A stretch of 64,000 bases of DNA, from NCBI GenBank assembly GCA_965637545.1, contig OZ281500.1:3534001-3598000 (forward strand). The letters are read 5' to 3'. The translations under genes were made by a program, and so were the position numbers. Of the stretch, positions 9,751-14,759 are shown in pieces; position 1 is the stretch's first letter; the number at the start of each line of letters is the position of its first letter. Below the pieces are notes generated by a model that ran no database searches, was not told where the DNA came from, and saw only the letters and a program-made list of their open reading frames with translations. This DNA is from Phallusia mammillata (Eukaryota).

Positions 9751-12700
9751 ATGAAAATGATGAACGGGTCAACCTCTCCTCAGGAGGGAGAAAACGAACC
9801 ATCCCCTTATGGAGACCTGAGTCACCAAGCCCAAATCAGGTGCACCGTTGTGGAAGAAATTGTAAACCGAGAGAAGGCTTATCTACAGGTTCTGCACTAT
9901 GCAGTAGATGTAAGTAACAACTGATAAATATCTGACAGTGCAGATATTTTGGAAGATATTTTTTTGGTTTTAACACACATCTCTGAAAGCCGCTGTACCA
10001 TGATTGATACGATTAAATACAGGTATTCATTTAAGGGATAAAATTTTGAGAAAACGACCGAAATTTATATTTCAAATATAAAAACATATTAACAGACGTA
10101 TTCGCATTACCCAATGCTATAAGAAAGAAGTTTGGTAACTTGCAGCTTCACAGATTTAATTGGTGAACCGATGCGGCCTTTCATTTTGAGTTATTGCACG
10201 AAAGAAACCACGGGTTTAAAATTACGAATACCCTCACCCGGGAAGTTAATACGTTACGTCATGTGGTGACGTAATGAGAACGTGACCCCAGTAGCAAACC
10301 AGGGGTTATTTCCAGATCTCATGTATAGGAAATAATTATGCAGTGGTCTGCTATTACCAATCTCACTAAGACAGACCTGTAATACAGGCTGTATGCACCA
10401 AAACATTTTATGGACAGTAGGGCTGGTATTTCGTGGAGAGAATGATGAGTTAACTGTCTACGTTCCAATTGTTCGGTTGCTAATCCTAAAGCAATAACCT
10501 CTCACGAAAGATCAGTATCGGTGAAATTGTGTGAAAAGAATCGCTCAAAAGCGAAACTTCATTGCCTGGCATGTCGTTAACAACACCTACTTTTCTGATG
10601 ATGAAAACAACTTATTAAAAGCAGCTTCCGGTTCCACTTGCCTCTACGTAGGTGTCCTGTCGGTGAACGAAAGGGTAAAACTGTCAAAACAAGTTGCGCT
10701 CGTTAGTGCATCGCTATTAGTGATGTTATGAGCATCACACTGTACCTAAATGGGAACTTTGAAGGAAACTTTAAAGCACTGACATTGTAAAGATTTAGAT
10801 AAGTATTGGAAGATATCCCTCACATTTTGTGAAATTGACCATAAAAATAGTATTGAAATACAATACATTCTTTAACATAATCACATCGATGAAAAATATG
10901 GCATCTTCAAAAATAATTATACACGTTACTTTGTGTGTATTTGATGATTCCAGTGGAGTGTTAAAAAACAATAATTAGGAAACATTGCGAAATACATTTG
11001 GCTGGTTTGCGATTATAACCTAGTAATTAAGTGTGGTTTGTACACATTTGCCTGCTCACGCAGACAGTGGCTCGTCACCTATAAAACGGAAATTAGACTT
11101 TCTGTTGCCATGTAGGGACTTTATGCTGGTAATGGCTGGGTCAAAATGCACCCGTGATTAACGTGGTGTTCAAAGGCTTCCAAGAATATGAAAAACAAAA
11201 CTCTTTCAAATGCAATTTTATGATAACATGAATCAATATATCACCTTTCCCAGTCAGGCTCAAATTATATTATGTAACGTATTCATTATACTTGCGTAAT
11301 GTCAAAACGACGAATTGTTACCCCATAGTGTTCCAAATCACAGAATGGTTTTACATTCAATATTAGTTGTTTCTCATCTTTTATCACTTGTACCACACCT
11401 AAAAACGCCCTTCGTATTTAGGTTATGAAGACTGAATTAGAAAATTGCTGCGAACAAATCGAATTTGAGGTGGAAGACGGTCACGTGAGGGCGCTGTTCG
11501 GAAACGTGGCTGATATCTTGGTATTCCACAAGGCTTTACTGAAATCCCTAGAGTCAGCAGTGGGAATGGCTAATAAGGATCAGGCGGAAAAAAACGAAGA
11601 TTTTTACAGAAAGTTGGCAGAGTCCAACATCGGGGAAACATTTGTTAAAATGGTAATTTTCCAAATGTAAGATGTGTCTGGTTTTATACAATATCCCAGA
11701 ATTTGAATCACATATGTAGGCTATACTCAACATAGGTTTAACTGTTAAACGGCCCCAATTGCTTAAAAGCCTCTGTTGGCCGTAGAGGTTTGGGCGTGGC
11801 TTTTACTGTAAAAAATACGTTGAAATCGTGTGTAACAAGTTTGATCGATTCAACAACATGACTCAATGTATAATGATATCTTTTGCGGAAGTATGAAATA
11901 ATTTGCGCTAAAACCACTAACAAATGCAATTACTGCTGTATGATTTATCGCGGTTTTTGTAATCGTTACCGTGGACATTAGTGATTTATAGGCTGTTAGC
12001 TATTGTTTACCAGACATATAACGCGTTACTGGTCAGTAATTGCCCATTTGCATGGCAAAAACGAAAAACTAATTCGTATAACTACCACAGAAAAGTTCAC
12101 CTTTAGCTTTGAGTAGTAGCATTTACTAAAAAACACAAATTAACCTATTTTAGGACACCTTTGACCAAAAACAATTTGTTTCTTTATCTATCTTATGAAC
12201 GTTTACCCATTATACCAACGTTACATAAACTGTCTCATGCTAAACGAATATTTTAGCGCTACATTCCTTTTACAGAGAGATTCGTTTCGAACTTACGAAA
12301 TCTACTGTGCGAATCACGCCAGGGCAGAAAAAGTGGCAGCCGATCTTATTCAAATGTCAACGCTTAAACGAAATCTCCAGGTTTGTCAGTTTAATGTTTA
12401 CATCCTTATTTATGCTCTCAAACAACTGAAGAGCGTATACTTATCAAATTGTGTTTCACTTTTCGATAAATTTGTGTGTTTTTTCTATTTATTATAGAAA
12501 TGGACAATAGAGGGGCCTTTTGCAGAAACAACGTCCAACGAATCAACAATGTTATCCGCTATTCTTACAGAGCCCCTGCGACACATTTGCAAACTACGCG
12601 TATTACTTAAGGTAAACATTCTCCTACATTACTTTAGCTTGACACTCTAGGAAAACTGTTTTTATAAAGTATAAGTAGTAGTAATGAATGCATTCATGGG

Positions 12701-14759
12701 CATGTTAAGTTAGGCGCAATTGAATCTTAATGGATTCTGTAACTTTCAACGATATTGTAAAACACAACTAGCAAAAACTAAGACTCCGTTCGGTTCATCT
12801 TCCTGACAAACGGTTTAAAATTCCACTGCGAAACCCAAATGCTCTCCTGGGTAGGCAAAGGTGGTCGCCATTTTTTTCCGACAAGTGATTTTGCTATGCA
12901 GCGTATTAATATGAACGAAAAGTGTCACCAAGTGAAGACAATATTTGCAAAACAACCCCTTTATGCACATGAAAGCCGGACCAAAAACAATACATCAAGT
13001 ATTATGGCTTATTAAGATCCTACTGTCAAGCAAAAAAAACAACAACGGTTGTATTATCAAATTTACGGCTACTTTAATGAAAATACTAAAGCTGAAGTTT
13101 ATCGGAGCTGTGTTACTTAACACAGAAAATGATTTTTTAATGATTCAGTTTTTGTGATTTTACAGACTTTGGCGGTTTTCACCCCTGCCGTTCACCCTGA
13201 CCTTGATGATATATTCACATCGATTCAGATTACGCACGGGGCGATGACGTCAATAGAGGCAACCAAGCGTGGCAATATCTTACAGGGTGCTTACGAAATA
13301 TGCGACCAACTTCAGCAAGTTTGGGACAACAGGGGCTTGTGCAACAAACAGGGATTTCTGACTAAACGTGGTGGAAGTGTCAAGGTTGGTAGCTCGTATT
13401 GAGTTGTTGGCGCATAAAGGTCACTACTGCCTTTGATAGCTTATAGAAATTAAATAGATTCTAACATAAGCGGAAAGTTTAAAAAGAGACAACCAATTTA
13501 CAGTTTTTTATGGTGTCTCTATTCAAATACAAGCAAATAATTGTGTTTTTTACAATCGATAGAGTGTTGTTTTGTAATTTACATTAGAATTTTTGTTGAA
13601 GGACACTATAATTACCAACTGTATGAAATTACCCATATAGCCTACCAAAAATTCCCATCACATAAGAGTTATGTCTTAATTATAAGGAAACCAGACAAAA
13701 AATACGAAACCTGAATCGAATTTCGTGAGACATTGCAATGCAAAACGTATATACGAAACACAAGCTAAATTGTATGTATCTAAAAACATGTTGTCGCTTG
13801 CAGAACTGGAAAATCCGATGGTTTACACTCAGAGGCTACGAAATGAAATACTTCGATGAACCAATAGTAAGTAAAATCATCACTTGTGGAACAGCAGAAG
13901 TTTAACTTTAACCAAAAAAACAACAACCCAATTCGATCGTTATGTTTTGTCTGTCAGATGTATTTATCAACATTTTGGGTCAGGCTTTCGCATACCGAAG
14001 AATGTAAACAGATCTGTAATAACTTATAAATATAGATAGAGTCTCGAACATAACGAAATTTAAAATAAGAAAAACGTTGCTGCTATATGCTGGCAAGACA
14101 CACAACATGCTGCACAAATTGCGAAATCTGTAAATTTACATTAGATGATGTTTTTCCGTTAAGGGAAAATTTGAAAGACTTGTGAAAACTAGTGAAAGGT
14201 TGACAAGATTAGATTAAAGGAAACACTATGGCAAATTACGCAACAACATAGCTTGGCATTACAGTTTGCTCAATAACAGCCTGCAAGATACACAACAACA
14301 TACACTTATTCACAGGACGAAAAAGCTCTAACTACGCTGGACATTCACCAGTGCAATGCAGTTGTTGAAAACGACAGTCAATCAAAACCAAACTGTTTTG
14401 GGTAAGGCAGTAGTCTTCAAAAGTTTAAATTTTTCTTTTTGTTGCTAATGTAACGTGTACAGCAGTCCTGAATATTTTAGTAATTTCGATCGTTCTTAAC
14501 TTTTTATACAATCTTAACCTTTCTTGTTGCTAATTTAACTTCTACAGTACTGGTTAACATTGTATTTTCACATAGGTTGGTGTTCCCGGAGCGCACATAT
14601 TACATGTACGCCATCAGTGCGAGTCAAAAAGCCGAATGGACCAATCTAATCGCCTGGAAGATTTTTGTCACGCATTCCACCGAAGAACGAGCCAGACTTG
14701 CTATTGCTGCCCCAGCTCAACAGCCTCTCACATCAGTTTTACAGTTGCTCAAATGCTGA
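9751..14759 (+). CDS. DH (RhoGEF) + DAPP1/TAPP-like PH domain protein, 8 coding exons, 386 aa
   Basis: Exons 9751-9909, 11422-11652, 12276-12380, 12498-12611, 13166-13384, 13804-13866, 14316-14401, 14576-14759, all GT-AG and in phase; in-frame TAA upstream of the ATG. DH-like segments: VVEEIVNREKAYL, LFGNVADILVFH, YEIYCANH, LTEPLRHICKL. PH: KQGFLTKRGGSVKNWKIRWFTL...NCFGLVFPERTYY...EW. Confidence 0.9.

What the first reader, a model, noticed from the sequence alone, without database searches (positions are those of the whole stretch)
9751..14759. Compact RhoGEF(DH) fused to a DAPP1/TAPP-type phosphoinositide-binding PH domain
The PH domain (LTKRGGSVKNWKIRWFTL...LDIHQC.AV...NCFGLVFPERTYY..A.....EW..I.WK) follows the DAPP1/Bam32 PH pattern closely from memory, including the beta1 Lys and beta2 Arg that bind 3-phosphoinositides. 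DH-associated PH domains usually belong to other subfamilies, and DAPP1 itself is SH2-PH. A DH in place of the SH2 suggests domain shuffling that created a direct PI3K-to-Rho link.
Basis: partly seen in the sequence, partly recalled or inferred. Interest (0 to 1): 0.7.

Follow-up and report, generated by a model that had tools for sequence, protein, structure and literature searches.

The report
Sea-squirt RhoGEF with a DAPP1-type PH
This is a real, expressed sea-squirt gene whose small protein joins a P-Rex-like Rho-activator (DH) domain to a lipid-sensing PH domain taken from the adaptor DAPP1. It is a clear case of domain swapping, kept across ascidians, but what the protein does has not been tested.

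Summary
Window 9751-14759 (+) holds an 8-exon gene for a 386-aa protein. All seven splice junctions appear in spliced contigs from two studies, and one 1,930-nt contig spans every exon.

- **DH domain (N-terminal half).** It belongs to the PREX branch. The family profile scores 128 bits against P-Rex2 and 122 against P-Rex1, versus 88 for Asef.
- **PH domain.** It is DAPP1/Bam32-type, not a DH-associated PH.
  - Profile against PDB: DAPP1 97 bits; the next single PH domains score about 47.
  - The window's PH is 47% identical, without gaps, to an annelid SH2-PH protein.
  - The predicted PH of the Clavelina orthologue fits DAPP1 at 1.5 Å.
  - All three PH introns lie at the same codon and phase as in SH2-PH (DAPP1-type) genes of other animals.
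- **Distribution.** Same-architecture orthologues occur in Ciona, Clavelina and Styela, where NCBI auto-names them "P-Rex1/2-like". Ciona savignyi also has a more canonical paralogue.
- **Function (inferred).** PI3K lipids probably recruit the protein to membranes, where it acts on a Rac-type GTPase.
- **Caveats.** The catalytic Asn (P-Rex1 N238) is Glu or Asp in every member. Two auxiliary lipid-binding basic residues are also missing.

Verdict: a new variant of a known kind, of moderate interest. The scan had not noted this gene before.

The parts
9698..9750 (+). 5' UTR of exon 1. Transcript contigs begin at 9698-9702, directly after a ttgcag, so this may be a trans-splice acceptor (not shown).
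   Evidence: There is no ATG in 9698-9750, and an in-frame TAA lies at 9727.
9751..9909 (+). Exon 1: start codon, 26-aa N-terminus and the start of the DH domain (CR1). It contains E41 (9871-9873), the equivalent of P-Rex1 E56.
11422..11652 (+). Exon 2: DH domain, including the family-specific conserved block and the LFGN motif.
   Evidence: Pfam RhoGEF, E 8e-4 on this exon alone; the top seven PDB hits are all P-Rex1/2.
12276..12380 (+). Exon 3: DH domain.
12498..12611 (+). Exon 4: DH CR3. The canonical P-x-Q-R-x-x-K/R-Y-P motif is degenerate here (R193, H194, L198, R199).
13166..13384 (+). Exon 5: the last DH helices, with E234 (13256-13258) at the catalytic-Asn position, then the DH-PH linker and PH strand beta1 with K270 (13364-13366). 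The DH/PH junction lies inside this single exon.
13804..13866 (+). Exon 6: PH beta2-beta3, with K279, R281 and Y292, and with D294 at the DAPP1 K197 position.
14316..14401 (+). Exon 7: PH beta4-beta5, ending in NCF + 2 nt (a phase-2 intron). T303 lies at the DAPP1 R206 position.
14576..14759 (+). Exon 8 coding part: PH beta6-beta7 and the C-terminal helix, a 30-aa conserved tail, and the stop codon.
14760..15000 (+). 3' UTR. The 1,930-nt contig runs about 480 nt beyond 15000.
9829..13276 (+). Span of the DH domain (aa 27 to about 240), introns included.
13346..14663 (+). Span of the DAPP1-type PH domain (aa 264-355), introns included.

Best explanation
The locus is an expressed ascidian gene (the genome is probably Phallusia mammillata) encoding a compact 386-aa chimera.

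Shown:
- It has a Dbl-homology domain of the PREX branch (aa 27 to about 240), a short helical linker, and a PH domain (aa 264-355) that is homologous to the PH of the SH2-PH adaptor DAPP1/Bam32.
- There is no SH2, DEP, PDZ or IP4P domain.
- The gene arose by genomic joining of PREX-type DH exons to the PH exons of a DAPP1-type gene. The three PH introns kept their positions and phases.
- It has been conserved across ascidian orders, and the PH is its most constrained part.

Inferred:
- The PH keeps the canonical K-Xn-(K/R)-X-R plus Tyr pocket, so PI3K products (PI(3,4,5)P3 or PI(3,4)P2) probably recruit the protein to membranes.
- There the DH engages a Rac/Cdc42-type GTPase.
- Whether it catalyses exchange is open, because the Asn that is essential in P-Rex (N238) is Glu234 here and Glu/Asp in all relatives.
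For: - **Gene and transcript.** establish the model and its splicing. The Ciona intestinalis orthologue has the same eight exons and phases.
- **Architecture.** Pfam RhoGEF and PH score above threshold in six orthologues.
- **Fold.** The AF2 model of the Clavelina orthologue has pLDDT 85 and pTM 0.86. Its best folds are the P-Rex1, Asef and collybistin DH/PH tandems. Its PH fits DAPP1 1fao with Z 18.1, 1.5 Å over 100/100 residues and 42% identity.
- **PH origin.**
  - Against PDB, DAPP1 scores 89.5 bits with a single sequence and 97.2 bits with the family profile. The next single-PH hits (TAPP1, GRP1) score about 47. No DH-adjacent PH is among the best 60.
  - The window PH is 47% and 44% identical, without gaps, to two SH2-PH proteins.
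  - In the PH tree the family (100/100) falls in the SH2-PH group (83/76).
  - The introns after GGxVK (phase 0), after residue 40 of the PH (phase 0) and in the codon after NCF (phase 2) are identical in a non-human vertebrate DAPP1 contig (L043), in SH2-PH contigs L049/L053 and, for some of the three introns each, in L001, L011, L017, L024 and L036.
- **DH origin.** P-Rex2 scores 128 bits and P-Rex1 122, against Asef 88 and collybistin 82.
- **Constraint.** Mean pairwise identity is 62% in the PH and 40% in the DH.
- **Pocket residues.** K270, K279, R281 and Y292 are kept. The equivalent DAPP1 residues K173 and R184 are required for lipid binding (PMC4975593, PMC2193139).
Against: - No lipid-binding or GEF assay exists for any member.
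- E234 replaces the catalytic Asn. The P-Rex1 E56A/N238A double mutant is GEF-dead and P-Rex2 N212A is used as a GEF-dead mutant (PMC4601503).
- The CR3 Q-R and Y-P residues are also degenerate.
- In the PH, D294 sits where DAPP1 has K197, and K197E disables Bam32 (PMC2193139). T303 sits where DAPP1 has R206.
- The whole window protein could not be submitted to Pfam or AF2, because a spliced protein has no reference. Those tests rest on orthologues 37-51% identical to it and on single exons.
- The PH tree does not resolve where within the DAPP1 group the family branches, and it contains no DH-associated PH sequences.
- A language-model look-alike search of the PH part gave only weak (under 0.85) hits to generic or DH-type PH clusters.
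Confidence: 0.75

Rival explanations
1. Pseudo-GEF or adaptor. The protein is still recruited by PI3K lipids through the DAPP1-type PH, but the DH has lost exchange activity. It would then act as a GTPase-binding or protein-binding scaffold, a functional analogue of the adaptor DAPP1 with a dead DH in place of the SH2.
For: - The catalytic Asn is Glu/Asp in all 13 family sequences. It is kept only in the C. savignyi paralogue P0015.
- CR3 is degenerate.
- The DH evolves faster than the PH, at 40% versus 62% identity.
- Asn mutants of P-Rex are the standard GEF-dead tools (PMC4601503).
Against: - The CR1 Glu (E41) is kept.
- The DH fold is confidently predicted.
- The DH is still conserved across ascidian orders, with family-specific invariant blocks.
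- The review notes that the single Asn mutant of P-Rex2 may retain residual activity (PMC4601503).
- A carboxylate at this position has not been tested.
Confidence: 0.3
2. Ordinary orthologue of a known GEF. The gene is simply the tunicate P-Rex (or another ARHGEF), with its own cognate DH-associated PH, and the DAPP1 likeness is superficial.
For: - NCBI names the orthologues 'P-Rex1/2(-like)'.
- The DH is closest to P-Rex.
- The PH sits at the canonical position after the DH, with a P-Rex-like Q-L-Q..W linker.
Against: - P-Rex chains that include the PH (4yon, 5fi0) are not among the listed matches of the PH queries at E 0.01 or below, while DAPP1 scores 97 bits.
- Three of three PH introns match DAPP1-type genes.
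- The protein ends 30 aa after the PH and has no DEP, PDZ or IP4P domains.
- The P-Rex review states that P-Rex is absent from invertebrates (PMC4601503).
Confidence: 0.04
3. Gene-model artefact. Two neighbouring genes, a DH gene and a truncated DAPP1, are wrongly joined.
For: None found.
Against: - Exon 5 alone encodes both the end of the DH and PH strand beta1.
- One 1,930-nt spliced contig spans all exons.
- Full-length orthologous proteins and transcripts exist in at least five other sources.
- There is no SH2 exon in the window.
Confidence: 0.01

Closest known systems
P-Rex1 / P-Rex2 (PREX branch of Dbl-family Rac-GEFs)
   Same: - The DH domain is closest to P-Rex by a margin of more than 30 bits.
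- The DH-PH tandem fold is shared.
- The linker motif before the PH is similar.
- Both are predicted or known PI3K-lipid effectors.
   Different: - This protein has 386 aa against about 1,600.
- It has no DEP, PDZ or IP4P domains.
- Its PH belongs to a different lineage (DAPP1-type).
- The catalytic Asn (N238/N212) is Glu.
- The CR3 Q-R/Y-P residues are degenerate.
DAPP1 / Bam32 / PHISH (SH2-PH adaptor)
   Same: - The PH domain is 42-50% identical and aligns without gaps.
- It fits at 1.5 Å rmsd.
- It has the same three introns.
- It has the same K-Xn-K-X-R plus Tyr pocket.
   Different: - There is no SH2 domain and no equivalent of the Y139 linker. A DH domain precedes the PH instead.
- The K197 and R206 equivalents are Asp and Thr.
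Asef (ARHGEF4) / collybistin (ARHGEF9)
   Same: These are the next-closest DH domains and DH-PH structures. This is consistent with the published placement of PREX as a branch of the ARHGEF4 subfamily (PMC5499878).
   Different: They carry SH3 domains and cognate DH-associated PH domains, and their sequence scores are lower.
Ciona savignyi H2Z747 (P0015), an uncharacterised paralogue
   Same: It has a P-Rex-like DH followed by the same DAPP1-type PH start.
   Different: It keeps the canonical CR3 (PVQRLCKYPLLL) and the catalytic Asn. Only a 150-aa fragment is known, and its full architecture is unknown.

Membership tests
Dbl-family RhoGEF (DH-PH) | DH domain recognised by the Pfam RhoGEF profile (PF00621) above the gathering score | tested here: met
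   Orthologues score 44-104 bits against a cut-off of 27.6. The window's exon 2 alone scores 20.1 bits. The whole spliced window protein could not be submitted.
Dbl-family RhoGEF (DH-PH) | Helical DH fold followed directly by a PH domain | tested here: met
   The AF2 model of the orthologue P0003 has pLDDT 85. DH/PH tandems match it at Z 20-22.
Dbl-family RhoGEF (DH-PH) | Catalytic pair: CR1 Glu and alpha6 Asn (P-Rex1 E56 / N238) | tested here: not met
   The Glu is kept (E41). The Asn position is E234 here and Glu/Asp in all 13 family sequences.
Dbl-family RhoGEF (DH-PH) | Nucleotide-exchange activity on a Rho-family GTPase | not testable with these tools
   This needs a biochemical assay.
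P-Rex family | DH domain of the PREX branch | tested here: met
   The family profile scores 128 bits for P-Rex2 and 122 for P-Rex1, against 88 for the next family. No full DH phylogeny was made.
P-Rex family | DH-PH followed by two DEP domains, two PDZ domains and an IP4P-like domain | tested here: not met
   The ORF stops 30 aa after the PH. Pfam finds only RhoGEF and PH in the orthologues.
P-Rex family | Cognate P-Rex PH domain | tested here: not met
   The PH queries do not list the P-Rex DH/PH chains at E 0.01 or below, while DAPP1 scores 97 bits.
DAPP1/Bam32 family | DAPP1-type PH domain | tested here: met
   plus three shared introns.
DAPP1/Bam32 family | N-terminal SH2 domain | tested here: not met
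   There is no SH2 in the protein and no SH2-like exon anywhere in the window.
3-phosphoinositide-binding PH domains | Canonical K-Xn-(K/R)-X-R motif in beta1-beta2 plus the beta3 Tyr | tested here: met
   K270, K279, R281 and Y292 are present and invariant in the family.
3-phosphoinositide-binding PH domains | Auxiliary basic residues of DAPP1 (K197, R206) | tested here: not met
   These positions are D294 and T303. The family has D/E and T/N/Y there.
3-phosphoinositide-binding PH domains | Measured binding to PI(3,4,5)P3 or PI(3,4)P2 | not testable with these tools
   This needs a lipid-binding or translocation assay.

The most novel reading that the evidence does not exclude
Ascidians rebuilt the PI3K-to-Rac module. 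A PREX-type DH was grafted onto the DAPP1 PH, and the gene then duplicated. One copy (this gene) lost the catalytic Asn and became a PI3K-recruited pseudo-GEF or adaptor that takes over DAPP1-like adaptor functions. This would be a rare documented replacement of the PH within a DH-PH cassette, followed by catalytic inactivation.
Probability: 0.22. Interest if true: 0.65.

Novelty: new variant of a known kind. Interest (0 to 1): 0.5.

Why it matters
DH-PH cassettes are usually treated as co-evolving units, and P-Rex is described as vertebrate-only (PMC4601503). Here the sister group of vertebrates carries a PREX-branch DH whose PH was replaced by the PH of a different PI3K effector, DAPP1, and intron positions give a DNA-level record of that exchange.

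This offers three things:
- a natural experiment on how far the PH of a Dbl GEF can be exchanged;
- a minimal (386-aa) candidate PI3K-responsive Rho regulator in an embryologically tractable animal;
- through the Asn-to-Glu change, a possible natural pseudo-GEF.

It also shows that the automatic 'P-Rex1/2' names given to these proteins are misleading.

Tried and rejected
- **Exon-by-exon Pfam** gave only a weak RhoGEF hit on exon 2, because the PH is split over four exons.
- **Exon-level PDB searches.** The last exon also hit designed 'bagel' repeat proteins, and exon 5 hit haemoglobin through a short FTPAVH match. Both are spurious.
- **Word-index search with the Owenia DAPP1 PH** returned only the query itself, so I could not test whether tunicates keep an SH2-PH DAPP1.
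- **DNA of the Owenia DAPP1 locus** was withheld.
- **The three ESM Atlas look-ups** gave only generic DH-PH or PH clusters at low scores.
- **Later hits of the exon-5 search** (P0013-P0020, P0022 and P0023): P0013 proved to be a SpaA-repeat protein. The others were long multi-stretch matches that I took for spurious without checking them.
- **Supplements of Fort & Blangy** are not held, so I do not know whether they listed this gene as a tunicate PREX.
- **Literature.** No paper on an ascidian P-Rex-like or DAPP1-like gene was found.
- **Contig L040** has a DH-like ORF near a PH-like exon, but on the opposite strand, so it is not a fusion.
- **Excluded contigs.** L005 comes from a human-gut assembly and L050 carries the vertebrate-type DAPP1 motif. 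Both might be human, so L005 was not read, compared or searched at all, and L050 was dropped after the motif screen that flagged it.
- **Whole spliced window protein.** It has no reference, so it was not sent to Pfam, AF2 or the large protein searches. It was used only inside scripts.
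Full report

Joining 9751-9909, 11422-11652, 12276-12380, 12498-12611, 13166-13384, 13804-13866, 14316-14401 and 14576-14759 gives one 1,161-nt ORF of 386 aa. Every intron is GT..AG, and all introns are in phase 0 except the last, which is in phase 2.

Public runs of the same species label hold about a fifth of the region's words, which is what exons alone would give. Laying four of them, from two studies, on 9500-15000 shows all seven junctions at exactly these places. Depth falls to zero in the introns, and a single 1,930-nt contig spans exons 1-8 and continues about 480 nt into the 3' UTR. 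The runs are only guessed to be RNA, but spliced contigs can only come from mRNA.

Transcript contigs start at 9698-9702, just after a ttgcag. ATG 9751 is the first ATG, and an in-frame TAA lies at 9727, so the N-terminus is fixed.

**2. Organism and relatives.**

Earlier notes of this scan call the genome the ascidian Phallusia mammillata (I did not check this independently). The relatives fit that. A whole-library HMMER search with exon 5, which spans the DH/PH junction, found only 15 true relatives among 1.84 billion representatives. The named ones are all tunicates:
- Clavelina lepadiformis, P0003, 373 aa, 50% identical over the whole length;
- Ciona intestinalis, P0024, 378 aa (P0001, 357 aa, is its isoform X2);
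- Styela clava, P0025, 384 aa;
- Ciona savignyi, H2Y7N5.

There are also unnamed transcripts and contigs. NCBI's pipeline names them 'phosphatidylinositol 3,4,5-trisphosphate-dependent Rac exchanger 1/2 (-like)'. The C. intestinalis locus has the same eight exons with the same phases, with exon lengths 156/207/105/111/219/63/86/187 against 159/231/105/114/219/63/86/184 here. The family therefore predates the split of the three ascidian orders.

**3. Domains.**

A spliced protein has no reference, so I could submit the window protein only exon by exon. Exon 2 alone gives Pfam RhoGEF at E 8e-4 and picks P-Rex1/2 as its seven best PDB matches. Exon 8 alone picks DAPP1 as its best natural match.

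The orthologues score above Pfam's thresholds for RhoGEF (44-104 bits) and PH (39-65 bits) and for nothing else. An AlphaFold2 model of P0003, built with nine family sequences, is confident (pLDDT 85, pTM 0.86). It shows a helical DH (residues 11-242), a seven-stranded PH with its C-terminal helix (248-340), and a further short helix in the conserved tail. Foldseek and VIA-align put the DH/PH tandems of P-Rex1, Asef and collybistin on top, at Z 20-22.

**4. What kind of PH?**

- With P0003's PH as query against all PDB sequences, DAPP1 (1fao) scores 89.5 bits (E 1e-24). Myosin X follows with 75.8 bits summed over its PH modules (47.6 for the best one). Cytohesins and TAPP1 score about 45.
- With a seven-sequence family profile, DAPP1 rises to 97.2 bits (E 5e-27), while TAPP1 and GRP1 stay at about 47. 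None of the 60 best matches is a DH-adjacent PH. The only GEF entries are the second PH of FARP1/2 and the C-terminal PH of FGD6.
- The window's own PH is 47% identical over 93 residues, without a gap, to the SH2-PH protein of the annelid Owenia (P0030). It is 44% identical to a second SH2-PH protein, on L001.
- The modelled PH superposes on DAPP1 at 1.5 Å over 100 of 100 residues (Z 18.1, 42% identity).
- In a maximum-likelihood tree of 35 PH domains, the eight DH-PH sequences form one clade (100/100). That clade sits in an unresolved group with the ten SH2-PH sequences (83/76), apart from most non-SH2 PH domains of the same search. The tree holds no DH-associated PH domains, because they are too distant to be retrieved. 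The HMMER ranking covers that comparison.

**5.

A scan of metagenome contigs with the PH alignment returned 58 loci. Many carry an SH2 domain upstream of the PH on the same strand. I left two out as possibly human: L005, from a human-gut assembly, which I never opened, and L050, which I dropped once the motif screen found the vertebrate-type DAPP1 motif in it.

In the genomic contigs, the PH introns are as follows:

| Intron | Position and phase | Window junction | Same place and phase in |
|---|---|---|---|
| A | between GGxVK and NWK, phase 0 | 13384/13804 | L043 (a non-human vertebrate DAPP1), L049/L053 (SH2-PH); L011, L017, L024 and L027 have the matching acceptor |
| B | after PH residue 40, phase 0 | 13866/14316 | L043, L049, L036 |
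| C | two bases into the codon after NCF, phase 2 | 14401/14576 | L001, L043, L049, L011, L017, L024 |

Intron A is not a general PH feature. The non-SH2 PH genes in the same set (L039-L042, L045, L048) lack it. So three of three PH introns, with their phases, are shared with DAPP1-type genes. This argues for a DNA-level origin of exons 5(part)-8 from a DAPP1-type gene, and against both convergence and retro-copying.

The breakpoint lies inside what is now exon 5. That exon encodes the last DH helices, the linker and strand beta1.

**6. What kind of DH?**

With P0003 residues 1-240 as query, P-Rex1 scores 62.7 bits and P-Rex2 52.2, ahead of collybistin (38.5), Asef (32) and Tiam1 (21). With a six-sequence family profile the scores are P-Rex2 127.9, P-Rex1 121.7, Asef 88, collybistin 82, BCR 68 and Dbs 51. 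This matches the published view that PREX is a branch of the ARHGEF4 subfamily, absent from Ambulacraria, protostomes and Cnidaria (PMC5499878). A P-Rex review states that P-Rex is 'absent from invertebrates' (PMC4601503).

The linker before the PH also resembles P-Rex's. So the PH occupies the canonical DH-associated position.

**7. Functional residues.**

*PH domain.* K270, K279, R281 and Y292 correspond to DAPP1 K173, K182, R184 and Y195 and are invariant in the family. K173 mutation abolishes 3-phosphoinositide binding (cited in PMC4975593), and R184C abolishes PI3K-dependent membrane recruitment (PMC2193139). However, D294 replaces K197, and K197E also disabled Bam32 (PMC2193139). T303 replaces R206; I assigned the R206 position from my own reading of the alignment. 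The family has D/E and T/N/Y at these two sites. Binding of PI3K lipids is therefore likely, but its affinity and specificity may differ from DAPP1's.

*DH domain.* The CR1 Glu (E41, equivalent to P-Rex1 E56) is kept. The Asn of the I-N-E motif (P-Rex1 N238, P-Rex2 N212) is E234 here and Glu or Asp in all 13 family sequences. E56A/N238A is the standard GEF-dead P-Rex1 mutant and N212A the P-Rex2 one (PMC4601503). The CR3 motif (PxQRxxKYPLLL in P-Rex) reads P-L-R-H-I-C-K-L-R-V-L-L here. The DH is also less conserved than the PH, at 40% against 62% mean pairwise identity.

**8. A paralogue.**

C. savignyi H2Z747 (P0015, a 150-aa fragment) has a DH half much closer to P-Rex1, at 83 bits over 126 residues. 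It keeps PVQRLCKYPLLL and the catalytic Asn, and it runs into the same DAPP1-type PH start. It maps only weakly to the C. intestinalis orthologue locus, so it is a separate gene.

The DH-DAPP1-PH fusion therefore probably predates a duplication, and the window's gene is the divergent copy. I could not retrieve the paralogue's full length. The window holds no second copy and no SH2 exon.

**9. Mechanism (inferred).**

PI3K products would recruit the protein through the PH. The DH would then engage a Rac/Cdc42-type GTPase at the membrane. I estimate:
- about 0.55 for some exchange activity or GTPase engagement coupled to PI3K;
- about 0.3 for a catalytically dead adaptor;
- the rest for other possibilities.

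The chimeric origin itself I hold at about 0.9.

**10. Novelty and verdict.**

The gene is annotated automatically in other ascidians, under a misleading P-Rex name. It is a new variant of a known kind: a Dbl-family DH-PH protein whose PH was exchanged for that of DAPP1. It is not a member of the P-Rex family (it lacks DEP, PDZ, IP4P and the cognate PH) and not a member of the DAPP1 family (it lacks the SH2). Interest is moderate, at 0.5.

Noticed in passing
window 600-4930, minus strand: Several ORFs read like exons of a TCP-1/CCT chaperonin subunit (for example around 4660-4932 and 3739-3933). This gene lies head to head with the DH-PH gene, so the two may share the 5-9.7 kb intergenic region.
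   Followed up: no
P0015 (Ciona savignyi H2Z747), not in the window: A second ascidian gene has a more canonical P-Rex-like DH (catalytic Asn and PVQRLCKYPLLL kept) followed by the same DAPP1-type PH start. Only a 150-aa fragment is available, so its full architecture is unknown.
   Followed up: partly
P0001 / L002 8319-8381 (Ciona intestinalis): NCBI isoform X2 of the Ciona orthologue skips the 63-nt exon 6. That would delete PH strands beta2-beta3 together with the K-x-R lipid-binding residues. No such skipping appears in the contigs laid on the window.
   Followed up: partly
window 9692-9702: Independent transcript contigs begin at 9698 and 9702, right after a ttgcag. This could be a spliced-leader trans-splice acceptor, which is common in ascidians. 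No leader sequence was seen.
   Followed up: no
window 14350: An A>T variant in one run changes Gln309 to Leu in a PH loop. The variants at 11460 and 13309 are synonymous.
   Followed up: yes
L040 3700-3990 (minus) and 6013-6319 (plus): On a 49-kb metagenome contig of an unknown eukaryote, a DH-like ORF (35% identical to P0015) lies about 2 kb from a PH-like exon pair, but on the opposite strand. These are not a fusion.
   Followed up: partly
L005 and L050: Two metagenome contigs returned by the PH scan may be human or another mammal. L005 comes from a human-gut assembly and L050 carries the vertebrate-type DAPP1 motif. L005 was never opened.
   Followed up: no
L034, L038 versus L049, L052, L053: The same SH2-PH gene of an unidentified animal appears both as genomic contigs with all three PH introns and as contigs in which intron A is removed while introns B and C are retained. 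The latter are probably partly spliced pre-mRNA.
   Followed up: partly
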